A stretch of DNA of 63,126 bases, the filler included, from Octopus bimaculoides (taxonomy: Eukaryota): assembly GCF_001194135.2 (NCBI RefSeq). It is 7 parts of 7 records of this genome, joined end to end, with 100 filler letters (N's around TTAATTAATTAA, not from the genome) between each part and the next. Parts side by side here need not be neighbours in the genome. Positions count along the whole stretch, not along the records: positions 31,641 to 41,864 come from NC_068988.1; 6 more parts are not named here. One strand, 5' to 3'. The notes beneath the pieces are model-generated. The model was given only the letters and a program-made list of their open reading frames with translations. It did not search any database and was not told where the DNA came from. Below are positions 7,813 to 42,054 of the stretch, piece by piece. Every line of letters starts with the position of its first letter. Positions within the stretch are counted from its first letter, which is position 1. The position numbers and the translations under genes were made by a program.

Positions 7813-7918
7813 CATGTTTTATGTATGTATTCTCATGCATATAGTTACATATCTAGACATGCTCATATATATTTAAATGATAATCTGGAAAGTTTTACAG
7901 ATTTTTACAGTCCCAGTA
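7813..7918 (-). mobile_element. Short 3' fragment of the RLE retrotransposon family seen at 35754
   Basis: reverse complement matches ~36215-36320; flanked both sides by (TATG)n. Confidence 0.8.
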
Positions 7919-8094: not shown

Positions 8095-9149
8095 CATATG
8101 TGCATGTATGTATGTATATGACGAGAAGGAAACAGCATTGACGATATCGCTGTATTTTCTGAGTGGATAAAAAAAAAAAATGAGATACTTCTCGAAGTAC
8201 AAGGGATGAAACGGCAAAAATTCTAAGCGATTCGGTTTTTGTAGAACTTTGAAGTCAGTGGTTCAGAGATTGAGTCGTCGTTTGAGGCAGCGCTGGTTGT
8301 TTGTGATTGAATCCAATGCCATGAATATAAATGGCAGCCAAAGATACGCTGCTTGAACACAGAGGAATCGGCTCAAAGACTAACTGAATTGAATATCTGA
8401 AAGTCTGTTTGTGTATGTATATATGTATGCATCGTATGTATGTATGTATGTATGTGTGTGTGTGTGTGTGTGTGTCTGCGTGTGTATGCATATGTAGGTG
8501 TGTGCGTGTGTTTCTCTGTGTGTCTGTCCGAGAGAGAGGGAGAGAGAGGGGAGAGAAGAGAAGAAAGGAAAACGTGACAACGCTATACTATATGAATGCT
8601 TGCATATATCATACGCATATATATATATAAAATATAATACATACATATATATATGTATATATACATACATATATATATATATACATATATGTATATACAT
8701 ATACATACACATATATACATATATATATTTTGTAAGTATGTATATATGTATGTATGTGTCTATCTTTCTATATGTATCTATATGGATATAGATATGCAAA
8801 CATATACACATATAGTAAATAATTTTAAATGTATATATTTAATAAACATACATTTAATATCGCAGTGTCTGTCAAGAGGAGGAATGGCTAAAATGCTAGG
8901 CTCTCCCTCCTTCTTCCTTCTCACTCTCTCTCTCTCTCTCTCTCTCTCTTTTATTTTCTCTCTCTTTCTATCTCTCACTCTCTGTCTCTCTCTGCTCAAC
9001 GGAATAGGGAAATGCTCTACAAGAGCAGTTTCGTCCGGTTTTTAGTGACTTCTTAAGATTTCCTGGCCCTTGCTGCCGCATAGAGGTAATGAGAGCTAAT
9101 AAGCACTTATCAAAATCTTATAAAGGACATTCATCGCATTGATTTCATT

Positions 9150-9320
9150 CAGTTGCATATATTCATTCTCTTTTTTATTTTCTCTTATTCCTTTCTGCTA
9201 AAGAGCGTAGGCTCGAAACGTAAAAGGCTTTCTCACTTTCCCGAGCGTCAGACTGATACACCTGCATTTTGTTCATACACCTACCTTCGTCTTTTGTCTT
9301 TCTGTAAATTTCAAGTACAC
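9150..9320 (+). mobile_element. Penelope-like pLTR remnant, copy 1 of 3
   Basis: homologous to 55340-55505 and 61262-61435(-); contains hammerhead-like motif; ends in (CA)n. Confidence 0.7.
9190..9227 (+). ncRNA. Minimal type I hammerhead-like motif, variant core
   Basis: CCTTT-CTGCTAA-A-GAGC gtag GCTC-GAAA-CG-TA-AAAGG: 5-bp helix I, 4-bp helix II, core deviates at positions 6 and 8. Confidence 0.5.
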
Positions 9321-9322
9321 AT

Positions 9323-9361
<39 letters not shown>

Positions 9362-9890
9362 CACATATATATATATATTTGTATACACACACACACACAC
9401 GTAACATATACATATATACATACTGATTTGGAGCAATGGATCTATCACACAATTGTTTTTACTGTTACTACAATTATAGCCCTCCCCTCCACTACTATAA
9501 CCACCACCACCACCTCTACTACTACTACCTCTACTACTGCTGCTGCTGCTGCTGCTGCTGTTACCACTGCTGCTGTCACTGCCGCTGCTGTTGCACAAGC
9601 ATTATGACATTACCAATATTACAACTGCTTCTACAACAATTGTTGTTGTTGGCTATGATGACGATGATTCTACTCACACACACACACACACACACACACA
9701 GGCACACACAAACACACACACAGATATACAATTTCTTTTTGGAATTGTGAATCTCGAAGCAGATAAAGCTACAAATAATAGCGTGTAAGTATTGGGTTAA
9801 AAAAAAAACCTTTGGAGAGAAAAGTCAAAGGCTGCATGCATACATACATACATGTGTTTGTGTGTGAGTGTGTGTGTATATATACAAATA

Positions 9891-9921
<31 letters not shown>

Positions 9922-10171
9922 TAATGTCACCACTATTGCTATTGATGAAGATAAGAAACCTTTGATCACACATTTCCTATTGTCTCCACCCTGATACTAT
10001 TTCACACAATACTTCCAGTGCCATTCCCCTCTCTGAAATATCACCGGAATTATCTCCTTTCATTTCAAAGTAATCCATTTTTACCATTTCCTCTGACTTC
10101 TTCCCTCTTGACTGACCCTAAATGGTTACACTATCTGCTAAATAATAACAGCTACATCTCCAATTTTTACG

Positions 10172-10212
<41 letters not shown>

Positions 10213-10234
10213 TCACATTAGTCCGTAATATTAT

Positions 10235-10760
10235 TTTCTACTCTAGACACAAAGCTCGAAATTTTGGGGTAGGTGGCCAGTCGATTAGATCGACCCCAGT
10301 ACGACCTCGAAAGGATGAAAGGCAAAGTCGACCTCGGCTGAATTTGAACTCAGAACATAAAGACAGACGAAATACCGCTAAGCATTTCACCCGGCGTGCT
10401 AACGTTTCGGCCAGTTCGCCACCTTGTTAGTCCATGATATTCTATGAGATCACACAGTCTTGTTTGGAACATCTCTTTTCAAAGATCCGCTCCATGAGGA
10501 TTGACTCAGAGTTGAGGTGGGTGTACACAACAGCAATAATAACAACGGTTTAAATGTTTGGCACAAGGCCAGCAATTTCGGGGGGGGGGGGGCTAAGTCA
10601 ATTAGATCGACCTCAGTGTTCATCTGGTACTATTTTATGAACCCCGAAACGATGAAATGCAAAGTCGATCTCAGCGGAATTTGAGCTCACAACATAAAGA
10701 TGGATGAAATGCCGTTATTCATTTTGCTCGGCGTACTAGCGATTATGCTAGCTCATCCTC
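10235..10760 (-). mobile_element. Two tandem SINE family D copies
   Basis: gatcgaccccagt...gaaaggatgaaaggcaaagtcgacctcggc...tttgaactcagaac occurs twice. Confidence 0.85.
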
Positions 10761-12174
10761 TTCACAATAGTAATAATAATAATTATAACAATGAGGCGGC
10801 AATCATGTGGTTTCTCTATCTCCTAGAAATAATAGTGAAATCTCTTTAAATTACATACATGTGCCCTCTCGAAGAAGACGGCGCGTTGATGAACTAGAAT
10901 CTAAAGGACAGCTTGTTCATAGGCGATCTTCAATAGCATAGGCATAAAGGCCACAAATCAAAGCACAAACTACATGTGCCCAAATATAGCAGTTATTAGC
11001 TTGGCAGTATTATCAACTTCATTAGTCCTTTACGAACACAGGGAAACCAATCAAGCACTTAGCGGAAGTTATGTTCTTCATCGATCACCGGTGGATGATT
11101 ATGATGATGATGATAATGATGATGATGATGATATATATACATAAGTACGGCTTTATATCAAACATAAGTAGACAGACACTTTTTTAATTTGTACTTATGA
11201 GATAAAATACAAACGTACACACAAAAATATTCTTAAGTTATACGCTTTAGATATTTTAACGGTTTATTCCCAAGAAATAAACGAAAATCAATTTAACGAC
11301 TTTTTTCCCGAAATGGTTTAAATGGCCCTCTGACGATGCTATAACTTTAGATCCAGCTCAGTTACAGATCATGTCATTTGCCAAATAAACACAACTCCGT
11401 AACTCTATATATTTTCTGTGTCATATACATTCATTAATTGCATTATAAATGAACAGTGTTATGTTTCATGTATAGTTTATCTGAAAGAAGATATACACAT
11501 TTGTTTGAAACAAGATATACTACATCGCAGTTCTCATATATATTAACGTATGTGGACGTGTATGTATATAGATTAGTACATACATACATACATACATACA
11601 TTATATATATATATATATATATATATGCACGTAAATACACATACACATAACTGATAAATTCATTGTCATTTCTTTTATAAAAATCCATTTGATGTGTGCT
11701 AAGTTTAACAACAGCAAGAGATGCAGATGTAACCCATAATTTCTGTTTTCTGGGTGATCTGAAGATCTGAACTGAAAATATTTACAATACTTTAAAGCAA
11801 CTGAATTTAAGCTTTCAGCTGATAAAGAGGTGAATTTGGGTGTCCACAATGTTCATATTTGATAACTGAACATAGAAAACGGAGAAAAAGCTATTTCCCA
11901 AATCGAAAACCTTTACACCATTTATCTTTCTGTCAACCTTACTCCCCATAGTTTGTGCTACACATACACTAGTGTATGTAGTATGGTATACATACTACAC
12001 ATACAAGAGATGTATTGCACAAAGGCGCTGTGAACAAAGAGTAACCAATGAATATTATATCAAACTTTATATGAAATATGCCAGAGCTATCCTCTTACAA
12101 CAGGACAATATCCCCAACTGCACTTGAAGAAATAGTTTTGATATACATACAAAAAATTCGCTCCGTAGACATTC

Positions 12175-12305
12175 CTTTCTACTTTACGCAGATGGCCTGA
12201 AAAGGTGAAGGGCAAAGTCGACCCGGCAGAATTTGAACCTCGAACATAAAGACTGACGAAATGCCGCTCAGCGGTTTATCCTGCGTGCTAACGATTCTGC
12301 CATTA
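12175..12305 (-). mobile_element. SINE family D 5' part
   Basis: ggcaaagtcgacccggcagaatttgaacc...tgctaacgattctgcc. Confidence 0.8.
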
Positions 12306-12807
12306 AAGAATATAAAGTTCGCACACCAACTAGAAGCCTCCATGGAAATAGTGAAATTGATAGAAAATAGGGAGAAATATCAGTGCAGACAACCTTTAAG
12401 TACCGTATGGTATAAAACTTGTTAAACTTAGTAGCAAAAACAAATATAAGCCGGTGGTGAACTCTCCAAAAAGTATTCATTTCTTTTTGAATCTCCATGC
12501 ACTCTCAGAATCGTTGCTCAACTAAAACTCAACAAAAACCTTGATAAGAGATGCTCTGTATGCCATGACAAAAGTTATGCATGGGTTTGCTTCTAAAATT
12601 GACACGAAGTGTAGCTTCTTTTGAACTCTCGACTGTTATATGCGACGTCATATTTCGAAGTTGGTGCTTTTGCAAATTAAGGACAAGAGATAATTACAAA
12701 ATATCTGTTGAACAAAAGTAACAGAGAAGTCTTTAAATCCATTAATATGCGACAGAATACAGAGATTATCAGAAACACATACACAAACATATGTATGTTG
12801 GTATATT

Positions 12808-30832: not shown

Positions 30833-31757
30833 GTAACATATGGCTTTACTTAACTATTTCGTTGACATGTGTGTGTGTGTGTGTATATATATGTGTGTGT
30901 GCGTAGGTATCATAGAGGGAGTGTATGCAAGTGAATGTGTGCATTAGTGTGTGCGTGTGTGAATGTTTGACAGGTTATAAAGTGAAATAGGTTGGTTTTT
31001 TTTGCTTTACAAAATTCACAATAAATTTTGAGCTAAATTCAATTTATTGTATTGTTTTAGTGTCGACAAAGGAATAAACAAAAAAAATAGAATTAAGTCA
31101 TTTCAATTGTATTCGCCGTGGGTCACTCACAGCAGTCATTTCAAATTGTTTAGCCAGAGATTTCAACAAATGTAAGCAAATACACACACACACACACACA
31201 TATATAAGTATTCATATATGTATATGTACGTATGTATATACACATTTACATATATACACACATTTGTGTATATATACATGGATGTATACAAACACATATA
31301 TACATGTGTGGATATTTATGTACATATATATATATATATATATATATGTAATATACATATAGGTGTATATGTATATGCAAATATATATACGTATATATAT
31401 ATATATATGTGTGTGTGTATATATATATATATACATATGTGTGTGTGTGTATATATATATATATATACATATGTGTGTGTGTATATATATATATATATAT
31501 ACATATGTGTGTGTGTATATATATATATATACATATGTGTNNNNNNNNNNNNNNNNNNNNNNNNNNNNNNNNNNNNNNNNNNNNTTAATTAATTAANNNN
31601 NNNNNNNNNNNNNNNNNNNNNNNNNNNNNNNNNNNNNNNNTAATACATACATCCAGCAAAGCCTTTATAAATGTAATGGAACAGAAAGTAAATAAAGGTA
31701 AAAAAATACCACACCTTTGGTTAATGACAATGTAATAAATATTTCTGCTTGTGAATG

Positions 31758-31821
<64 letters not shown>

Positions 31822-32182
31822 TGTGTATTTGTATTTGTGTGTGAGTGATTTCATATGTATATATGTTTGTTATTTTTTAATCTTTTTAGATATTCACACA
31901 GTCTTGGTGAACCATCAGCCAACATTGTTGATTTTCTGTGCTAATCATGAAACAAGAGCTAAATAGTCAAGTCTAAATATTTAACTAAATGCACTCACAC
32001 ATACACACGTGCACACACACCCACAAACCCACACACATTTCAAGAAAGATTTTCTTAAAATAGAAATTATTAATTATATAAAAATATCTTGAAAAAAAAA
32101 AAAATAGAGAATGACATGAACTGCCTGAAAGGAAGTTTTAGAAAATCTAAGAAAGTCTTTTTTAATTATTGTGACTATAGGC

Positions 32183-32285
32183 ACAGGAGTGGCTGTGTGG
32201 TAAGTAGCTTGCTTCCCAACCTCATGGTTCTGGGTTTAGTCCCACTGCATGACACCTTGGGCAAATCTCTTCTACTATAGCCTCC
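32183..32285 (+). mobile_element. SINE family C head
   Basis: ggagtggctgtgtggtaagtagcttgcttcccaac...caccttgggcaaatctcttctactatagcc. Confidence 0.85.
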
Positions 32286-32549
32286 ACTATATATCAATCA
32301 ACTACTTGGTGACTTCTTCTGCCCTCTTTGTTTGAAGAAGACAGAAGTCACCACATTCGAAGAGGTCTTAAAACTACAAATTTCGTTAAGCGGTCTTAGT
32401 AAACTAAAATACATTTATAGTGTCCATCAGGCTTGGAAAATGGACATTAAATGATGAAGATGATATATCCTGAGGTAAGAATGAGTCTGTGTAGGGCCAG
32501 CACTCCTACATAGAACAAAAAATGCAAAGTTCAAAGGCATTAATGACAA

Positions 32550-32960
32550 TTCAAAACCAACAAGACCTGGTAGAAGACAGCCCAGAATCAAGAACAGTGG
32601 AGTAAAGTTGTTGATAGCTTATGTTCCATAGACAGTGGAGGTGGATGATTTTGGCAAGGCCAAGAGCTGCACCAGGTTCCATTGTCTGTTTTTGGCATGG
32701 TTTCTGTGGCCTAATACGCTTCCTAATGCCAATCACTTTACAGAGTGTACTAGATGCTTTGTATGTGGCATCTGCACCAGTACTTTTTACATGGCTTCAT
32801 CACCAGCGTTTTTTATGTGATGCCAACACCAACAGGATTACCATCCATTTTAGTTTGATCTCTATCCTTTGACCTGTCTAGAATGGGAGGCCTTCAGGAG
32901 CTTGTGCTCAGGGTCATTACAGCACACAAACCACCACAGTGTAACAAGGACTGGAACTTG
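32550..32960. mobile_element. Mixed RTE fragments
   Basis: + strand C-terminus AQNQEQWSKVVDSLCS; minus-strand copy of the 3' UTR seen at 40230-40330. Confidence 0.55.
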
Positions 32961-33199
32961 TGGTGATCAATGCTGTTTAGTTTCACACTACATGTGATCC
33001 TTCAAGTAACTGTATGTAAAACTAGTAACTTTTCAATAGAAAGATTTGGTTTTTATTTTGTTGGTATTATAGGAAAGTGGGTTATACATCATTAGATGTA
33101 TACCTGACTTTCCTATATAATATTAAGAATATAACGGAACGCTGAACTCCAGACTATCAACTTAAACACAACATTTATTTAAGGTGGAATATATATATA

Positions 33200-33425
33200 C
33201 ATCTTTAGCTCTTGTTTGTTGAGACGTCTTCTGTGTGTGTGAGCATGGTTGTTGGGACGTTGGTATGTAGATGTGAGCGAGCTGTCTAGCGTAAGTTCGA
33301 AAGATGGAGAGAGACAGCTAAACACGTCCTTGCTCAATCGCTGGCCAGCAAGAAAGAGACAGAATGAAGCGGGAAAGCTTGGTTGTTGAATTCCACGCAT
33401 GCGTGAGACTACGCATGCGCACAGC
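33200..33425. promoter_or_regulatory. Candidate promoter: CpG-retaining island with two NRF1-type palindromes
   Basis: ACGCATGCGT 33395-33404 and ACGCATGCGCA 33411-33421; many CG dinucleotides in CG-poor surroundings. Confidence 0.5.
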
Positions 33426-33776
33426 ATTACTACAGTATTACCAAATGTATTGTTTAGTATTAGCCCTTTGTAGAAGATGTAATTTGTGAAGAGATTACTA
33501 ATTAATTAATGATTAATCCTCCTCTTTAATAAGATTAGCAGCTGACTATTGTTTGTTAAAAGCTGGTTATGTAAGATCTAAATTAATCACTAAGATTTAT
33601 TATGTTTTAACAATTTTAATTTGCTAGAATTGCAACTTCTAAAAGAAAATCTGCTGCTAGAACATTTAAATTTAAGGATAACACACACACAGACACACAC
33701 ACAAACAAACATTTCAGGCACCCTCCCAATTTTGCTCTTAGAAGAATTACTTTGCCTGCACCCAACCATGTCTTAA

Positions 33777-33955
33777 TCCTTTAGCATTAAGGTTTCTCTG
33801 TCAAGGGTAATTACCTTGCAGCTTTGAAATTTTGATGATGTGATTGTTCGTTTTTAGAATGACATAGTAGGGTAGGTATGAGAGGTCAGATCTGGCTGGA
33901 TTGAACACAAAACAGAATATTTTGGCTGGATACGGCTGGTTTAAATGCTAAAGAG
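33777..33955 (+). mobile_element. piggyBac-like MITE
   Basis: TTAA on both sides; TIR tcctttagcatt / aatgctaaagag; homolog at 37436. Confidence 0.75.
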
Positions 33956-34599
33956 TTAAGCAGTGATGTTGTCCACATGTAAACCCCCATACTTCAATGA
34001 TTAAACAACACTAATAATCACAAAGTGCTAGATTGGTTGTCACTGATTTATTGCCACAACTTGACCCAAACTGACCGACGGAAGTTAAATTTCTCTGTAA
34101 TAAAGAAACCATTTTGTTTTTTTCCCCTTCACTTTACTTCTGGGTGTATGATGACCTGGGTGTGTTTTTAAATTCACAAAGCTTTAAAAAACATTAGGTG
34201 CTGAGTCAACCTGTTACTCAATAAATACAACTTCAGTTATAAGTGTTGAGTGCTATATTCCATCAACCATACCTTTTCTATTCTCTACCCCCATTTCTAA
34301 CCATCTGTCTGTATCCTCTCTTATATTCATCTTCATGTTTCCTGAGAGTTTGCTCTTACACTGCATCACTATCATCTTTATTCCCTCCTGACTACTGCAG
34401 CTCACCCTTATATAATGTGTGACAGCCATATGGCCCTTATGTAGCCAGGTACCTATGCTTGTCTCTCTATCATACATTGGCCTTGGCGTAAAGCCATGTC
34501 CCTGCTTTGAATATTCCCCCTTATTTAGTAGAGGAAACTTTTTTCTTCTTCCCTATTCTCTCTTCCTGTCTTACATGTTACCTGGCAGCCTCTCTAGTA

Positions 34600-34765
34600 C
34601 ACACTGCAAAGTGGTTGGTGTTAGGAAAGGGCATCCAGCTGTAGAAACCATGCCAAAGCTGACACTGGAGTTCAGCATAACCCTGCAGCTAGCCCAATCC
34701 TACCAAACTGTCCAACCCATTCCAGCATGGAAAAAAAAATGTTAAATAACGGTGATGATGAATGT
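34600..34765 (+). mobile_element. RTE-type 3' tail
   Basis: ggttggtgttaggaaagggcatccagctgtagaaac...ccagcatgg...gatgatg, as at 40245-40400. Confidence 0.75.
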
Positions 34766-34799
34766 AGATGTAGAAATATGTGCATGTGTGTATGTGTGT

Positions 34800-34944
34800 C
34801 ACATAAAATGCACTCAGTCTTCTCTGGAAAGTGGTTGGCTTTAAGAAGGACAACCAGAGCTTTTCCATCCTTTAAATCAAGCTTGATCAATCTATTTTGG
34901 GAAGTGGGCCACATACGACATGACTCATCATCAGGCAGATCACC
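34800..34944 (-). CDS. Tentative exon of an unidentified protein
   Basis: T-rich acceptor ttttttagtag|GGT; open frame GDLPDDESCRMWPTSQNRLIKLDLKDGKALVVLLKANHFPEKTE; donor unclear. Confidence 0.3.
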
Positions 34945-35753
34945 CTACTAAAAAAAAATTCAAGGTAATTTTTCATTAAGCATGCATTTCAAAAAGTCTT
35001 ACAGATTGCAGTTTGCCCATGATTGCAGTAAACCAAATACATTTCAGCATTTCTTAGAATATGGCTATTAAAGTTGTGCTCACTAATATACTTGTAGTAT
35101 AGATATATTTCTTTGTCAATGAAATTATGGTTATGATTGAGCAAGTTTGAGTTTGCTTAATCAAAAATAGTGTAATAAGTTTGAAGGCTTTTATGTGGAG
35201 AAATTTCATAAAATGATATATTTATACCGAGAAGAGTTTCACCTTATTGGTCAAATATTATATGTCTTGGTCGATGGGATTTTTATATTTCGTCAGCTGA
35301 GACTCCTATATTTAAATCTTAGTATATAGTTTTCTTGTTAGTTGTTAAATCAGTGTGATTTTTAAAATAGGGTTGGCCTTCAGTTTATGCTTTATAACTT
35401 CCTATCTATTTCTGTTTTGTCATTACGAAGCACATTACATTCATGTTAATAATAAAGAGTGGGTTTTGCTATGGTAGAGTGACGTTAATAAATTTTGAAA
35501 ATGACATAAATTTTTGTTGATTTTAAAAGTGACATTCACATCCACACCTGTTTCTTTGCAAATACCTAAGCCTTTGCATAGAACAATCGGAGATATAGGT
35601 GTGTACACCCCACCCCCCCACATACATATGCAAAGGCACACATACAGAAGCACACACAGATACTCAGAGGCACACAGACCTACACACACAAATATTTACT
35701 TCAGCATATATCATACAAACACGTACACACATGCACACACACACACACACACA

Positions 35754-36460
35754 CACAATGTTGTAGTTAGAACACTATATAATGAAATCTGTGAGAAGGA
35801 TAACCCTGAAGACAATGAAATAAGAACTCACAGTATGGTGGAAGCCATAACCACTCATAATAAAAAGGAATACTGGTGGAATGTCCCAGTGAAAACCTCA
35901 ATGAAATGTAAATACAATAGACCTGATATAATGGTTTGGGATAGAGAAGAGAAATTGTGAACAATTGTGGAAATTAGCTGCCCAACAGATGTTAACATAA
36001 AGCTGAAGATCAGTGAAAAGGTGAATATCTACGTTGAACTATTGAGAAATCTGCAGATACTGTATCCAGATTACAAGTTCAGGTTTATACTTGTAATTAT
36101 TGGAATGCTGGGATGTGTAACACACTGCCTAAATACCAATCATGAGAAATTAGGCTTCTCAAAACCAGAAAGGAGAAAGTTGATTTGAAGACTACAGATC
36201 CAATCCATCACAGGAACTGTAAATATCTGTAAAACTTTCCAGAAGTTTATTATTTGAGTATATATGAGCATGTCTGGATATGCAACTATATACATGAGAA
36301 TACATACATAAAATAAAACATATAAAATCTGCATGTATACAAACATACATACACACAAAAATACCTTGTTGTTGATGCTGAAATTCCAATGAAGGATCCT
36401 TGGATCTAGCCTAGAAACCAGCTCTTTCTCTATTGAAATCTTGAAATAAAACTGAATAAA
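35754..36460 (+). mobile_element. 5'-truncated RLE non-LTR retrotransposon (R4/Dong-like) in CA/CATA repeats
   Basis: HN..YWWNVPV..RPDIMVWD..VEISCP..EK..IY..LQ..G (PD-(D/E)xK nuclease); two in-frame TGA, no frameshift, ORF end 36257; (CA)n 5', (CATA)n 3'. Confidence 0.88.
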
Positions 36461-36609
36461 GACATACACACATGCATGCATACATACATACATACATTGC
36501 CATTTGCATTTTTGTTCTTAAAATAGGTATACCATATCATTGCCCACTAAATGTCAGAGTTTATAGGAACACATAAAGAAAGAAAGTTTTATTAGAAATA
36601 TCAGAACAC

Positions 36610-36707
36610 TTCCGCATGGTTTCCATTGGCTGCATGTAATCTGTTGGATTATCCATATATTTTCTTTCTCTCAGTGTTTCAGGTTGTAAAGGTAATTCAT
36701 GGACACC
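36610..36707 (-). CDS. Tentative exon of an unidentified protein
   Basis: acceptor tttctacag|GGT; GVHELPLQPETLRERKYMDNPTDYMQPMETMR; phase 0 start matches exon 38089-38218; donor weak (or terminal exon to TAA 36561). Confidence 0.4.
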
Positions 36708-37435
36708 CTGTAGAAACAATAATCTTTTCCTCGTGGGGTATATAATAGGCAAATAAAACAAGAAACAAAATTATCCAGCATTTATTTAAAGGACCCAGTT
36801 GTTCTTCCACCTATGCATTATGGCTATAATGCCCGTGCGTGTGTCATCTGCTTCATGATATATTTATACTAATCCCTGTTCTTATCACCCTGTGTATGTA
36901 AGTGAAAACAGGGTATTGTAAATACCCATCTTTGTTTGTGTGTTTGCAAAACTACTGGAAAACGGGCGAATGGATTTTCACCGAATTTGGCAGAAATACA
37001 CATTGGGTGAGTGGCTCGAACTCATTATTTTGGATTGATTATCTTCAAAACTGGAGGACGAGTAAAGCAAAATGTTTTTTTTCTTTATTACATATGTATA
37101 AACGATAAGCAGGGGAAATAACTCTTGATGTCATTTTGATGACATGAATTCGTAGGAATATATTTAAATTAAATTTTTATCCTTGTGTGCGCGCAGGGTA
37201 TGCATCGCCCCTCCCATGCCCTTTTTTTTCTCATTATTAGCTTCTTTTATTTTTATAGTACAAAGTTTTTCTAATAGTTTTTTTTTCTTTTACTAAATTT
37301 GGATAAACCTGAAGCACACAAACACATACATAAATGATCAGATTACGCTATATTCCTTTTTCTTATATAATACTCCAATTGTATACCAATTGCCTGAGGT
37401 CACCCCAGGTTATATGACACAAACTTCCCGTTTAA

Positions 37436-37649
37436 CTCTTTAGCAATCAAACCGGCCGTATCCTACCAACATGTTCTACCCGTATTGTGTTCAAAGCAGC
37501 CAGATCTAGTTTCTTACACCTATCTTACAATGTTGTTATAAAAATAAACAATCACATCATTGAAATCTCAAAGATAATACCTGATTAATTCAAACAATGT
37601 GAATAAATAAGCATTACATTTGACAGAGTAATATCTGAATGCTAAAAGG
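37436..37649 (-). mobile_element. piggyBac-like MITE
   Basis: TTAA at 37432-37435 and 37650-37653; TIR ctctttagca / tgctaaaagg. Confidence 0.75.
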
Positions 37650-38088
37650 TTAAAGTAATCTAAATTAAAACTCTTCATTAAAAGTTCATGTTAATTTATA
37701 TCCTAAATACCATTGTAATAATGCCAGAATTTAAAAAAAATTGATTGAAATAAAACCAGTGTATTTCAACAGAAATATGGTGATGAAAAGGCTTAAGTTT
37801 CATTGTTTCTATCAGTGCAATTTTGGGATTTAAACTTAGTAAAGAATTCTATTTGTTCAGCATCAAGCTAGACACTTCCTTATCCATGCGTAAAGTGATC
37901 TGCTAATTGGCCAATTGGAAATGTCTCTAATTTACTAGTTTACAATTTACTAGTTACAATATAAAGTAAAAGATGAGTTGAGTGGGTGAAGTATCCCCTA
38001 CCCCTATTGCTTTAAGTTTCTTTCCCTTTTCATAGACCATCAGCATGGTTCCAGTAACATCAGATCAATTGGACATCTGCTGTCTTAC

Positions 38089-38218
38089 GTTATGCTGCAG
38101 TAGTTTCCCACCCACCAGAAATAAGCTGAAAGCAAAGTTCTTGCTTTTGTTATCAACAAAACCATCAACTGCATCTAAGATAAGCATCACCCCTAGCCCG
38201 CCCATGGGTTTACTCCAT
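38089..38218 (-). CDS. Tentative exon of an unidentified protein
   Basis: ctaac branch-like motif, CAG acceptor, GTAAGA donor; 130 nt open: WSKPMGGLGVMLILDAVDGFVDNKSKNFAFSLFLVGGKLLQHN. Confidence 0.45.
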
Positions 38219-38644
38219 CTGTTATTCACTTAATCAGAAATTTTGTGTTAGTTCACTGCATCATACCCCCCCCCCATCAACAAGGCTCTCTCTGTCCCAC
38301 ATTCTAGCATTTCTGAGGCACCTCAAACATGTTTTTTGTTTTCCACATAGTTCTTTCTACACATTAATCAGATTCTCACATTTTTTTTTCTAACTACATA
38401 GGTTCTTCTACACCTTCCTGGATCTGCATCTCTTTGGAAGCCATCCTTCTGATCATGTTTTCTCCAGGGGCATAAACATAAAAATTCAGAAATTCAAATT
38501 AAATATTAACCACATTGATTTCATTGATCTTAGATGGTTTGTACAAAAAACCAATGAAACCGCCTCACATATACATTTACTGCATCCAAGCCCCTCTTTC
38601 ATTTATTTCTGCATTGTTTCACTACACAATCAACAAACCACTGC

Positions 38645-38830
38645 TTTCATCATCATCATCATCATCATCATCACCATCATCAATAGCAGTAGTAGCGGCA
38701 GCAGCATTTTAATGTCCACTTTGCTATGTTTACATGGGTGAGATAGAGTTTACCGAGGCAGACTTTCTATGGATGGATGCCCTTCCAGTTACCAACCCTC
38801 AACTGTGTCCAAACAATATAATATTTTCCC
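38645..38830 (-). mobile_element. RTE-type 3' tail
   Basis: reverse complement of ggttggtaactggaagggcatcc...catg...ttaaa followed by (GAT)n. Confidence 0.65.
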
Positions 38831-39344
38831 ATAATTCTTTGAGAGGATTCCAGATATATAATCAGGTATTCTTTAATCTTTAGCGTGCTGTAGAGGCATG
38901 AAGTTGATGTATGAGTTTTCTCATTTGTAGTTGCAGGCGCACTTTCTTGCATTGAGATGCTTAAAATAAATAAATACTTCGCAAAATTTATTTCTGCTAT
39001 TTCAAGCTGGAAGCAGCCGTCTTTCTATTCAGAACAAGGTTAAACTTCTGTTTTCCGTTGCCATTTCACTTGACACAAGATACAGAATCTTTCAGATTGC
39101 ACTTTGTTTTTAAAGAAATTTTTTTCTGGACTAAAATGGTCGCTCTTCTATTTATGCAGAAAAGATACAAGAAATATCTAGAAGTATGATAGATAAAACT
39201 AAAAGAAAATAGTAAAAAAATACGATTAATCTTCAAAATACTAATATAACCAAGGGAAGCAACTATTAGAAAGTAAAGAATAATAATGTAAGGGACGGAA
39301 ATTGCACATGGAGGTAACTTACCATGGGAGATAACTCCTAAGTT

Positions 39345-39483
39345 CATAAGTGATCATTTTTATTTATCAGTTATGAAGAGCAAAGTCGACCCCGGCAGAA
39401 TTTGAACTCGAGAGACGTAACGACAGACGAAATACCATCCGGCGTGCTAACAATTCTACCAGCTCGCCACCCTGATAATAAAC

Positions 39484-39516
<33 letters not shown>

Positions 39517-39980
39517 GGGATGATGAAGATGATGATAATAATTAGTAATGGTAGTTTCAAATTTTGGCACAAGGCCTGCAATTTCAGGGGAGCGGTATAA
39601 TTGATTATATCAACTCCAGTGCTCGATTGGTACTTATTTTATCAACCATGAAAAGATGGAAGGCAAAGTTGACCTTGGCAGAATTTGAACTCAGAATGTA
39701 AAGGTAGGCAAAAATGTTACTAAACATTTTACCTGGCTTGCCAACTATTCTGTCAGTTTGTCACCCTAATCCTTTCAAATATTAGCACAAGGCCAGCAGC
39801 TTTTGAGGGGAGGAAGTCAGTTGATTACACCAACTCCAGTAATTGGTTGGTATTTATTTTATTAACCCCAAGACGATGAGAGGTAAATTTGACCTTGGTA
39901 GGATTTGAACTCAGAATGTAAAGAATAGGATCAAATATTGCAAAGTATTTTTCCCAGTGCTCTGATATTTTTGCTTGTTC
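39345..39980 (-). mobile_element. Three tandem SINE family D copies, the first two separated by (TAA)n
   Basis: core motif occurs three times; copies 2 and 3 show CpG decay. Confidence 0.85.
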
Positions 39981-39981
39981 A

Positions 39982-40400
39982 CCAGTGCTGGCTGACAGGT
40001 CCCATGCCAGTGGCACATAAAAAGCACCATTCTAGCATAGTTGTTGCCAGTGCTACCTGACTAGCTCCCATTCTGGTGGCACATAAAAAGCACCATTCTA
40101 GCATGGTCGTTGCCAGTGTCGCCTGACTCACTCCCATGACCGTGGCACATTAAAAAGCACTATCCAAGCGTGGTTGATGCCAGTGCTGCCTGAGAGGCCC
40201 TCGTGCCGGTGGCATGTAAAAAGCACCTACTACACTCTCAGAGTGGTTGGCATTAGGAAGGGCATCCAGCTGTAGAAACTCTGACAAATCAGATTGGAGC
40301 CTGGTGCAGCCTTCTGGCTTGCCAGTCCTCAGTCAAACCGTCTAACCCATGCCAGCATGGAAAGCGGATGTTAAACGACAACGATGATGATGATGATGAC
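39982..40400 (+). mobile_element. RTE-type 3' UTR with ~66-bp tandem units and (GAT)n tail
   Basis: units start 39982, 40047, 40113, 40180; then the ggaagggcatccagctgtagaaac tail. Confidence 0.8.
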
Positions 40401-41301
40401 CACCTTGATAGAGAAGAACAATAATAGGTGTGATGTAGATATTGTTCAGGCTAAATAACCTGCAGTCAGTTGTGATGGTTAGCTCCACCTCTTTTTCAGA
40501 AGTAACCTATTAGATGCTATGCAGTGACCCATAAAGTATCCTGACCAGACATGCTCTTGTGATGAAGATAGAGATACAGACATGAAGACAGGTGATGATG
40601 ATAGGATTACAATTTCATAATTATAGATTTCTTTCTTAGCTACTTTCATTATCAGGGTGAGTGAAACAATAAAATATCTTGGCTGCAATATAGTATAGAT
40701 ATTTCTTTTATCAGAATCAAACTGATTAATAGCAAGTTTAACAACATGATGGTTTTCAAAATCAAGACATATGCAGCATAAAAACAGAAAGTTGTGTCTG
40801 GGATTTGTATATTTGTATTAGTTTTCACATAACTTATCATTATAGATTGCTAAGCAGCTTATTAATAATCCAGATCAAATTAACTATAATGTTGATCCAA
40901 TGAAATTATAACCATAATAAGAAGAAAATTCATAAGCACTAACGAAAGTTATTCGCAAAAGTGCAAAGAAGTGTTCTCCCCAAATTTCATCAATCCTAAA
41001 ATAGAAGTAGAAATACAATTTGGGATATGTCTTGGTCTTATAGGATCTTCTCAACAAAACAGTCTACCCAAAGCTTCCTGATCTCACATCAACTTAAAGA
41101 GTATATACTGTGTTGGAGAGGAAATAATTCATAGATTAGGTAGATTAATAGATTCATTACAATGTTAGATGAATTATCTTGTGAGTTTTATTCTAGAACC
41201 TTGGATTTTATGTTCAAATCCCACCGGAATCAACTTTACCTTTCATTCTTCCAAGGTTAATAACTAAAATGCTAAATGATGGTGTTGTGTGTGTGTGTAT
41301 G

Positions 41302-41350
<49 letters not shown>

Positions 41351-41504
41351 CAAATGGATGTGTTATAATACTATTCCACAGCCATACCAACAATCCAACA
41401 TACGTCCATCATCAGCTGCCCCACGGATATCATTATGGTTTCGACACCTGGGCAGTGCCATTCAATCCAGCAGTGTCAACAGCACTGAAATAAGTATTGT
41501 TTGA

Positions 41505-41635
41505 GATTCCTGGCACGCTAGAAAGAACAGCCAAAATCCAAACCACTATTAGGGATTTTTATTTTTCATTCCCTTCGAAGTTTATCCCTAATAGCGGTTT
41601 GGATTTTGGCTGTTCCTTCTAGCATGTCAGGAATC
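41505..41635. repeat. 52-bp inverted repeat, 27-nt loop
   Basis: arms 41505-41556 / 41584-41635, 48/52 complementary. Confidence 0.95.
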
Positions 41636-41769
41636 CTATGATGGATACCTCTTATGTGTTTAAGAATGTACACTATTTATATGAATAATATATAATCTAT
41701 TGACTAATTTTTCTACACGCTAGGCCATTGATAGTAAAAATTTCTAAAATTTTTATTACCTTGATATTA

Positions 41770-41811
<42 letters not shown>

Positions 41812-42054
41812 ACTTGGGGATGGTCATATTGCCAGTTTAGCCAATAAAAACACACGCACTGTATNNNNNNNNNNNNNNNNNNNNNNNNNNNNNNNNNNNN
41901 NNNNNNNNTTAATTAATTAANNNNNNNNNNNNNNNNNNNNNNNNNNNNNNNNNNNNNNNNNNNNCATTATATTATATTTATCTTATGATATTTACTTTAC
42001 TTTATATTATACTCATTTATTGTGCTTTTAATTATTAATTTTTCTATATGTGAT

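What the first reader, a model, noticed from the sequence alone, without database searches (positions are those of the whole stretch)
35734..36495. RLE retrotransposon family that appears to target (CA)n/(CATA)n microsatellites
Seen: a 5'-truncated PD-(D/E)xK endonuclease-coding end starts exactly in a (CA)n tract (CAC AAT = His-Asn of the RHN motif) and ends before (CATA)n. A second ~100-bp copy at 7813-7918 (-) is flanked on both sides by (CATA)n in element sense. Known: R4/Dong-clade elements use RLE nucleases; Dong targets (TAA)n; ACAY targeting is known for APE-type Waldo elements. Inference: an RLE family with ACAY specificity, two of two copies here. I cannot tell if it is already catalogued.
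Basis: partly seen in the sequence, partly recalled or inferred. Interest (0 to 1): 0.72.

Follow-up and report, generated by a model that had tools for sequence, protein, structure and literature searches.

The report
Microsatellite-homing retrotransposon remnant in octopus DNA
This is a dead, front-truncated copy of a jumping gene (an R2-like LINE with a restriction-enzyme-like nuclease) sitting inside a CA/ACAT simple repeat, and its relatives elsewhere are bounded by ACAT repeats on both sides almost without exception, so the group most likely homes to that repeat.

Summary
Window 35754-36257 (+) is the last 167 codons of a non-LTR retrotransposon ORF with two in-frame TGA stops. It begins inside a (CA)n tract. 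After a ~205-bp 3'UTR the element ends at ~36460, directly before (ACAT)n. The ORF is a real PD-(D/E)xK restriction-like endonuclease (RLE): a profile matches the R2 CCHC+RLE domain, and the AlphaFold model matches R2 RLE best.

The targeting inference is supported, mostly by relatives. An independent Octopus vulgaris copy, truncated elsewhere, also starts right after (CCAT)n(CATA)n. In four 20-kb loci from two unidentified eukaryotes, families 40-52% identical in the RLE region are bounded by sense-strand (ACAT)n. This applies to truncated copies, full-length copies and two non-coding partner repeats, which together form head-to-tail arrays. There are 22 (ACAT)n tracts on the element strand and 1 on the other.

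Caveats:
- Only 2 of 4 readable octopus 5' junctions lie in a repeat.
- The octopus 3'UTR has its own internal ACAY run, which can mimic a 5' target repeat.
- Clade (Dong/R4, HERO or Togen-like) could not be tested.

Microsatellite-specific RLE LINEs are already known (Dong, Togen, some HERO), so I class this as a new member of that kind.

The parts
35590..35757 (+). 5' flank. A degenerate ACAY/CA-rich tract ending in a near-perfect (CA)n run at 35725-35757. I take it to be the upstream half of the target microsatellite.
   Evidence: Sequence read. TRF row 35725-35757, period 2, 16.5 copies. ACAY-run scan.
35754..36257 (+). 5'-truncated ORF remnant: 167 codons plus the stop, encoding the restriction-like (PD-(D/E)xK) endonuclease domain. 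Motifs: (R)HN at 35754-59, RPD with D58 at 35925-27, E73 of VEIS at 35970-72, K89 of EK at 36018-20. The copy is dead, with in-frame TGA at 35958-60 and 36186-88.
   Evidence: Translation. Homologs at 74-83% identity in O. bimaculoides and O. vulgaris. 1035 hits in the representative library. Profile match to R2 CCHC+RLE. AF2 model with pLDDT 88. Foldseek top hits are R2 RLE.
36258..36295 (+). Proximal 3'UTR (gtatatatgagcatgtctggatatgcaactatatacatgag...), conserved among octopus copies.
   Evidence: Alignment A3 of the window, L001, L011 and L008.
36296..36362 (+). Internal ACAY-rich run inside the 3'UTR. Its length varies between copies. It belongs to the element and is not target DNA.
   Evidence: Present at the same place in L001, L011 and the more distant L008. 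Alignment A3.
36363..36460 (+). Conserved ~100-nt terminal 3'UTR domain (…gctgaaattccaatgaagga…ctttctctattg…aaataaaactgaataaagac). The element's 3' end is at about 36460-36463.
   Evidence: 82% identity to L001 5470-5579. Recognisable in L008. No significant RNA fold.
36461..36497 (+). (ACAT)n run (atacacacatgcatgcatacatacatacatacat). This is the element tail and/or the downstream half of the target microsatellite; the two cannot be told apart.
   Evidence: TRF row 36462-36497, period 4, 9 copies. Relatives all end in sense (ACAT)n.

Best explanation
**What it is.** The feature is a dead, 5'-truncated insertion (~35754-36460, + strand) of a single-ORF non-LTR retrotransposon of the R2-like, RLE-bearing group. 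Full-length relatives have this layout: an N-terminal three-helix domain without zinc fingers, then RT, a CCHC knuckle and a PD-(D/E)xK nuclease, in about 1080-1140 aa and ~4 kb. The genome appears to be an octopus genome.

**How it most likely works.** The clade it belongs to integrates specifically into ACAY-type, chiefly (ACAT)n, microsatellites by target-primed reverse transcription:
- The protein nicks the repeat.
- The RNA ends in (ACAU)n just downstream of a family-specific 3'UTR. It can pair with the nicked (ATGT)n strand to prime cDNA synthesis.
- The new copy therefore ends up with (ACAT)n on both sides in its own orientation.
- Its tail becomes a target for the next insertion, which produces head-to-tail arrays.
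- Incomplete reverse transcription, followed by joining at CA microhomology, gives 5'-truncated copies such as this one.

**Shown here:**
- the RLE and RT identity;
- the junction anatomy in the window, in one O. vulgaris copy and in roughly 15 related copies;
- the strand bias of the repeats;
- the non-coding partner repeats that share the same ends.

**Inferred:** that the nuclease itself reads ACAT, that tail-target pairing primes synthesis, and which strand is cut first.
For: **RLE and R2-like architecture**
- Searches support this. The full-length relative P0187 models at pLDDT 86 and matches R2 structures at E 4.6e-36, ahead of LINE-1 ORF2p.
- Pfam finds RVT_1 and no APE domain.

**Octopus junctions**
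- The window copy starts in (CA)n and ends before (ACAT)n.
- The O. vulgaris copy L001 starts at a different codon, directly after ...ccatccatccatacatacatac.
- The chance expectation is about 0.85% per junction.

**Peptide evidence.** N-terminal extensions of 5'-truncated relatives encode sense (CATA)n, giving HTYIHTYI, in P0003, P0036, P0066, P0082 and P0107.

**DNA of relatives**
- L016 holds the closest full-length relative (52% aa identity). It was chosen blind to its flanks. The element spans 8768-12672, with (ACAT)n(CCAT)n(ACAT)n at 8505-8767 on the 5' side and (ACAT)n at 12673-12765 on the 3' side.
- L013 carries nine fragments and L014 about six elements. All are on one strand.
- Every ORF end is followed, after a 127-330-bp 3'UTR, by (ACAT)n or by a partner repeat that itself ends in (ACAT)n. 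One L013 fragment (ORF end 10474) is an exception: it is fused to a second fragment that ends in (ACAT)n.
- The 5' ends of truncated and full-length copies lie 0-13 bp after (ACAT)n.

**Strand bias.** (ACAT)n tracts of 12 bp or more: 22 on the element strand and 1 on the other strand, in 83 kb.

**Partner repeats.** Two non-coding repeats (~690 bp and ~1.26 kb) lie in the same orientation with the same (ACAT)n ends.
Against: **Thin direct evidence in octopus**
- The O. bimaculoides copy L003 starts inside a C2H2 zinc-finger pseudo-array at '...attcacaca|aatacacaag'.
- The Logan copy L004 has no long repeat at its 5' end.
- L001's 3' end is followed only by 'tgacatatatat'.

**Selection bias**
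- L013-L015 were picked by me because of their (CATA)n-encoded peptides. The other copies in those loci, and L016, were not selected this way.

**Exception among relatives.** One relative (P0079) has a (CTTG/CTTA)n-encoded extension instead.

**Gaps**
- No nicking or TPRT data exist.
- The relatives come from unidentified organisms, and their RLE regions are only 40-52% identical to the window copy.
Confidence: 0.8

Rival explanations
1. Tail homing without nuclease specificity. (ACAT)n is simply the element's own 3' tail. New copies land in older copies' tails, or in any ACAT repeat, because the RNA tail anneals to breaks or nicks there. The nuclease has little sequence preference. The outcome looks the same but the mechanism differs.
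For: Every copy carries the tail, and arrays are built element-tail-element. The non-coding partners share only the tail and not the rest of the 3'UTR. One L013 LINE 3'UTR (copy ending 8536) and one in L014 (ORF end 9488) are joined directly to a partner repeat without an intervening tail, as template switching would produce.
Against: Several 5' flanks are long repeats not preceded by any recognisable family 3'UTR. Examples are the window's 170-bp ACAY tract, L016's 260-bp (ACAT)n(CCAT)n(ACAT)n and L001's (CCAT)n. Known RLE elements are mostly site-specific through protein-DNA recognition (PMC4640811).
Confidence: 0.12
2. Coincidence or passive accumulation. The octopus genome is rich in CA/ACAT repeats, and this dead fragment merely lies next to two of them. 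Alternatively, such elements survive preferentially in repeat-rich, low-recombination DNA, as was proposed for Drosophila Waldo-A and Waldo-B near CA repeats.
For: The piece has other (AC)n runs unrelated to the element, at 31761-31818, 31992-32037 and 33681-33711. Two of the four octopus 5' junctions are not in a repeat. Passive accumulation is discussed in PMC3812793.
Against: The expected chance per junction is about 0.85%. The junctions are exact, at 0-2 bp. Orientation is always sense. The same holds for about 15 related copies and for full-length 5' ends.
Confidence: 0.04
3. Repeat born after insertion. The flanking repeats grew by slippage out of A/C-rich element or flank sequence once the copy was in place.
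For: Microsatellites do expand inside these elements. L008 has an (ATGT)n expansion inside the ORF at the codons for NIYAEL. The internal 3'UTR ACAY run varies in length between copies.
Against: 5' junctions at many different truncation points and at the true 5' ends all abut the same repeat in the same orientation. The element sequence at those points is unrelated to ACAT.
Confidence: 0.04

Closest known systems
Dong (R4 clade; Bombyx, Anopheles, and the snail Biomphalaria as DongBg)
   Same: An RLE-type single-ORF LINE that inserts specifically into a microsatellite and is known in a mollusc (PMC3812793, PMC4640811). 'Dong-R4' LINEs are reported as abundant and recently active in octopus (PMC13282606, PMC8967140).
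   Different: Dong's target is (TAA)n, whereas here it is (ACAT)n/(CA)n. Whether this family falls in the R4/Dong clade was not testable, because no reference sequences were available.
Togen (fish; related to NeSL/HERO)
   Same: RLE-type LINEs specific for the (TG)n dinucleotide repeat, which is the complement of the (CA)n seen at the window's 5' junction (PMC4640811).
   Different: Togen is described only from fish and targets a dinucleotide. Here the consistent repeat is the tetranucleotide (ACAT)n on the sense strand. The relationship between the two was not tested.
HERO clade families from the leech Helobdella (Repbase Reports 2014, cited in PMC4640811)
   Same: RLE LINEs of a lophotrochozoan with reported microsatellite specificity. 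'Hero' families are annotated in O. vulgaris (PMC13282606).
   Different: The cited source is not held in the library, so which repeat those families target is unknown to me. Most HERO families are non-specific.
Waldo (R1 clade; WaldoAg1/2, WaldoFs1)
   Same: Same target class: ACAY microsatellites (PMC3812793).
   Different: Waldo uses an N-terminal APE-type endonuclease. The present clade has no APE domain and has a C-terminal RLE. The shared target would be convergent.
R2 (28S rDNA-specific; solved structures 8gh6, 9dou, 9nl2, 9nl3)
   Same: Best sequence and structural match for the RT, CCHC and RLE parts. R2 is also the mechanistic model for TPRT by an RLE element.
   Different: R2 targets one site in 28S rDNA and has N-terminal zinc finger(s) plus a Myb domain. 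Here the N-terminus is a three-helix domain with no Cys/His finger, and the target is a microsatellite.

Membership tests
RLE-bearing (R2-group) non-LTR retrotransposons | PD-(D/E)xK restriction-like endonuclease at the C-terminus of the ORF | tested here: met
   Profile A2 aligns with R2 CCHC+RLE, including the RH(D/N), (K/R)PD, acidic-x-S/T and EK..KY motifs, at E 2.5e-6. The AF2 model of the window ORF (pLDDT 88) matches R2 RLE first, then cap-snatching PD-(D/E)xK nucleases.
RLE-bearing (R2-group) non-LTR retrotransposons | Non-LTR-type reverse transcriptase upstream in the same ORF, with a CCHC knuckle between RT and RLE | tested here: met
   Absent from the window copy, which is truncated. 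Present in relatives: RVT_1 at E 1e-24 to 1e-27. The nearest PDB sequences are R2. CRLC..ED..H....C lies upstream of RHD in P0131 (O. bimaculoides), P0042 and P0186. The full-length model matches R2 at E 4.6e-36.
RLE-bearing (R2-group) non-LTR retrotransposons | No APE-type endonuclease | tested here: met
   Pfam scan of six full-length relatives found only RVT_1, plus a weak zf-RVT hit.
Microsatellite-specific LINEs (behaviour, as in Dong, Togen, Waldo) | Independent copies bounded 5' and 3' by the same repeat in one orientation, including full-length copies | tested here: met
   Met for related families in L013-L016. Only partly met for the octopus family itself: the window and L001 fit, L003 and L004 do not.
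R4/Dong clade | RT-domain phylogeny grouping with R4/Dong reference elements | not testable with these tools
   No Repbase or GenBank reference sequences could be fetched. The only lead is that RepeatMasker-style 'Dong-R4' LINEs of ~4.2 kb are common in octopus (PMC13282606).
R4/Dong clade | (TAA)n target (Dong proper) | tested here: not met
   Flanks are (ACAT)n, (CA)n or (CCAT)n and never (TAA)n.
HERO clade | RT-domain phylogeny grouping with HERO reference elements | not testable with these tools
   No reference sequences available.
Togen | (TG)n-specific insertion and relatedness to fish Togen RT | tested here: inconclusive
   The window's 5' flank is (CA)n on the sense strand, but relatives consistently show the tetranucleotide (ACAT)n. 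No Togen sequence was available for comparison (PMC4640811).
Waldo (R1 clade) | N-terminal APE endonuclease and R1-clade RT | tested here: not met
   No APE domain, and an RLE is present instead.

The most novel reading that the evidence does not exclude
These sequences may represent an undescribed, widespread clade of RLE-type LINEs in cephalopods and other marine invertebrates, with strict (ACAT)n specificity. The clade would have its own non-coding partner elements, would build head-to-tail arrays, and would seed much of the (ACAT)n repeat content of those genomes. Its target would be convergent with APE-type Waldo. It would offer a second natural RLE system, besides R2, with a simple and abundant DNA target.
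Probability: 0.35. Interest if true: 0.6.

Novelty: new member of a known kind. Interest (0 to 1): 0.5.

Why it matters
Site-specific RLE retrotransposons are the model for target-primed reverse transcription. R2 is also being developed for programmed DNA insertion (PMC13586686, PMC13580325). A clade that reads a four-base repeat would add a new specificity to compare with R2, Dong and Togen. It would be a case of convergence with the APE-type Waldo elements, and it would help explain where (ACAT)n repeats and LINE arrays in cephalopod-like genomes come from.

For genome annotation the practical points are these:
- The ACAT runs next to these LINEs belong to the insertion event.
- The internal ACAY run in the octopus 3'UTR can split one element into two repeat calls.

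Tried and rejected
- No genome-wide read pile-up of junctions was possible.
- **Pfam.** It gives nothing for the window ORF or for the conserved N-terminal motif W..EL..D....Y......GYM.RL...W...P of full-length relatives.
- **P0001.** The O. bimaculoides protein is not on record for a locus look-up.
- **Last word-indexed homolog search.** The search with alignment A1 was swamped by words from the long protein P0042. It returned few octopus proteins.
- **P0145.** Its N-terminal MYVCMY looked like an antisense (ATGT)n 5' flank. The DNA shows an internal repeat expansion inside the ORF, not a junction.
- **Uninformative octopus contigs.** L009 is 3'-deleted, and L011 ends inside the internal 3'UTR repeat.
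- **RNA structure in the ~100-nt terminal 3'UTR domain.** MFE is -11 kcal/mol with z = +0.8, and there is no useful covariation in three sequences. The idea is not supported.
- **HDV-like ribozyme or other Rfam family at full-length 5' ends.** None found. The only hits are low-complexity 'mir-297' matches to (ACAT)n itself.
- **tRNA-like end of partner repeat B.** The last ~75 nt looked to me like an antisense tRNA. Neither ARAGORN nor Rfam supports this.
- **Literature.** Searches for an (ACAT)n-specific RLE element found none. Repbase Reports and Kapitonov 2009 are not held.
- **O. vulgaris repeat paper.** Its supplement holds no consensus library.

Full report
**1. What is in the window**

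The piece (31641-41864) is AT-rich eukaryotic DNA at 30-44% GC. The closest protein matches to the feature come from Octopus bimaculoides (P0001, 74% identity) and O. vulgaris (P0003, 83% over part of the query). From this I infer an octopus-like genome.

Reading 35754-36257 on the + strand gives 167 codons:
- The sequence is HNVVVRTLYNE...YNRPDIMVWDREEKL*TIVEISCPTDVNIKLKISEKVNIY...GTVNICKTFQKFII.
- Two in-frame TGA stops lie at 35958 and 36186. The natural stop is at 36255.
- The first codon, CAC, is the last unit of a (CA)n run at 35725-35757 (TRF).
- That run ends a ~170-bp degenerate ACAY tract.

**2. Where the element ends**

An independent O. vulgaris copy (L001, OX597824.1) aligns with the window at 82% identity. 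The aligned spans are window 36011-36463 and L001 5150-5579. This fixes the 3' end at about 36460-36463.

The 3'UTR has three parts:
- a proximal conserved stretch (36258-36295);
- an internal ACAY-rich run of variable length (36296-36362);
- a conserved ~100-nt terminal domain (36363-36460).

The same three-part layout is seen in L001, in L011 and in a more distant family, L008. (ACAT)n follows at 36462-36497.

There is one caution. A short copy made only of the terminal domain would look 'flanked by CATA on both sides' simply because of the internal run.

**3. It is an RLE element**

- Pfam alone is silent for the window ORF.
- An exhaustive HMMER search finds 1035 relatives. Many sit at the C-terminus of ORFs of about 1080-1140 aa that carry RVT_1.
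- A profile of the domain (A2) matches the CCHC+RLE region of solved R2 proteins (9nl3, 9dou) at E 2.5e-6. The CxxC...H...C, RH(D/N), (K/R)PD, acidic and EK..KY motifs align.
- The AlphaFold model of the window ORF (pLDDT 88.1, pTM 0.83) hits the R2 RLE domains first, with probability 1.0 and TMq 0.62-0.69. Viral cap-snatching PD-(D/E)xK nucleases come next.
- A full-length relative (P0187, model pLDDT 86) matches whole R2 structures at E 4.6e-36, better than LINE-1 ORF2p.
- No APE domain is present.
- The N-terminus of several full-length relatives shows a conserved Trp-spaced motif, modelled in P0187 as three helices (residues 22-76). It has no Cys/His finger and no Pfam match. I propose, by inference only, that this is the DNA-binding part.

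**4. Does it target ACAY repeats? Octopus evidence**

- L001 is truncated at a different codon (…SENENTYAELL). It starts immediately after ...ccatccatccatccatacatacatac.
- In ~40.7 kb of octopus DNA held here, ACAY-type runs of 12 bp or more occur about once per 2.7 kb per strand. A random junction abuts one in a given orientation about 0.85% of the time.
- Two other octopus copies do not fit. L003 (O. bimaculoides) begins inside a C2H2 zinc-finger pseudo-array at 'attcacaca|aatacacaag' and is also 3'-deleted. L004-L007 show no long repeat at the 5' end.
- L001's 3' end is followed only by 'tgacatatatat'.
- Taken alone, the octopus evidence is suggestive and not conclusive.

**5. Evidence from relatives**

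*Peptides.* Gene callers often read into the 5' flank of truncated copies. Five predicted proteins carry HTYIHTYI-type peptides directly before the element: P0003, P0036, P0066, P0082 and P0107. This peptide is the sense-strand translation of (CATA)n, a repeat that contains no start codon. One protein, P0079, has a (CTTG/CTTA)n-type extension instead.

*DNA.* The DNA confirms the peptide reading and extends it.
- **L016** holds P0186, the closest full-length relative, 52% identical to the window RLE. I chose it without knowing its flanks.
  - The element spans 8768-12672.
  - It lies between (ACAT)n(CCAT)n(ACAT)n at 8505-8767 and (ACAT)n at 12673-12765.
- **L013** contains nine fragments and **L014** about six elements. 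All are on one strand, head to tail.
- Each ORF end is followed by a 127-330-bp 3'UTR and then (ACAT)n. In one L013 case and one L014 case a non-coding partner repeat that itself ends in (ACAT)n intervenes; one further L013 fragment (ORF end 10474) is fused directly to another LINE fragment that ends in (ACAT)n.
- Truncated copies start 0-13 bp after (ACAT)n.
- Full-length copies start at a defined 5' end 0-3 bp after (ACAT)n. An example is 'cctagaggtcagacgtg...', which occurs twice in L014.
- (ACAT)n tracts of 12 bp or more number 22 on the element strand and 1 on the other, in 83 kb.
- Two non-coding repeats (~690 bp and ~1.26 kb) occur in the same orientation with the same ends. This is what non-autonomous partners would look like.
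- These loci come from two ENA long-read assemblies, ERZ25878582 and ERZ25878469. The organisms are not identified.

**6. Mechanism**

The best-supported reading is site-specific TPRT into (ACAT)n. The RNA's (ACAU)n tail is able to pair with the nicked strand, and each new tail offers a fresh target. This explains the arrays.

The data cannot separate nuclease or DNA-binding specificity from tail-guided homing. I give that variant 0.12. Chance or passive accumulation, and repeat birth after insertion, are each unlikely at about 0.04, given the exact and oriented junctions at many different truncation points.

No stable RNA fold was found in the octopus terminal 3'UTR domain. No HDV-like ribozyme was found at the full-length 5' ends.

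**7. Comparison with what is known**

- RLE clades are mostly target-specific.
- Dong inserts in (TAA)n, including in a snail.
- Togen in fish inserts in (TG)n.
- Some leech HERO families insert in microsatellites (PMC4640811, PMC3812793).
- ACAY targeting is described for APE-type Waldo (PMC3812793).
- Octopus genomes are annotated with Dong-R4, Hero and R2 LINEs. Dong-R4 has 1129 recent insertions of about 4.2 kb (PMC13282606; also PMC8967140).
- I found no paper describing an (ACAT)n-specific RLE element. Repbase itself could not be consulted, and the clade could not be placed.

I therefore file this as a new member of a known kind: microsatellite-specific RLE LINEs with a different repeat as target.

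**8. Verdict**

- Confidence in the main explanation is 0.8.
- Interest is 0.5.

Noticed in passing
window 39982-40227: A 66-bp unit repeated 3.7 times in tandem with 78% matches (TRF score 280). ORFs on the minus strand read through it with a repeating peptide.
   Followed up: no
window 32176-32290: The stretch 'ggcacaggagtggctgtgtggtaagtagcttgcttcccaacc...' looks by eye like an octopus SINE. A similar motif occurs in L001 around 2530-2570. No Rfam or tRNA hit anywhere in the piece.
   Followed up: partly
L008 207-263: An (ATGT)n microsatellite has expanded inside the RLE ORF of a related element, at the codons for NIYAEL. It created the spurious start MYVCMY of predicted protein P0145.
   Followed up: yes
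L013 9392-10081, 15199-15654, 16480-16935; L015 10020-10106, 10684-10769: A non-coding repeat of ~690 bp, often 5'-truncated down to ~85 bp. It always lies in the same orientation as the LINEs and always ends in (CATA)n. It is a candidate non-autonomous partner.
   Followed up: partly
L014 3383-4646, 9680-10292; L013 8797-9378, 16957-17569; L015 9381-9994: A second non-coding repeat of ~1.26 kb, with a shorter ~620-bp form, ending in (ACAT)n. In one L013 copy and one L014 copy it is fused directly to a LINE 3'UTR without an intervening tail. Its last ~75 nt looked to me like an antisense tRNA, but ARAGORN and Rfam do not support that.
   Followed up: partly
L014 10290-10605 and 10606-10921: A tandem duplication of ~316 bp inside the RLE-coding part of one 5'-truncated element.
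   Followed up: no
L013 15184-16480: A ~1.3-kb block (LINE 3' fragment, (ACAT)4 and a truncated 690-bp repeat) is present twice in tandem with near-identical sequence. This is a segmental duplication within the array.
   Followed up: no
L003 9600-9910: The O. bimaculoides copy is inserted in an array of degenerate C2H2 zinc-finger repeats (HKRIHTGEKPY-coding units). The copy is also cut off at L003 10866.
   Followed up: no
L013, L014, L016 (several places): Rfam 'mir-297' matches below the gathering score fall exactly on the (ACAT)n runs. They are low-complexity artefacts and not miRNA genes.
   Followed up: yes
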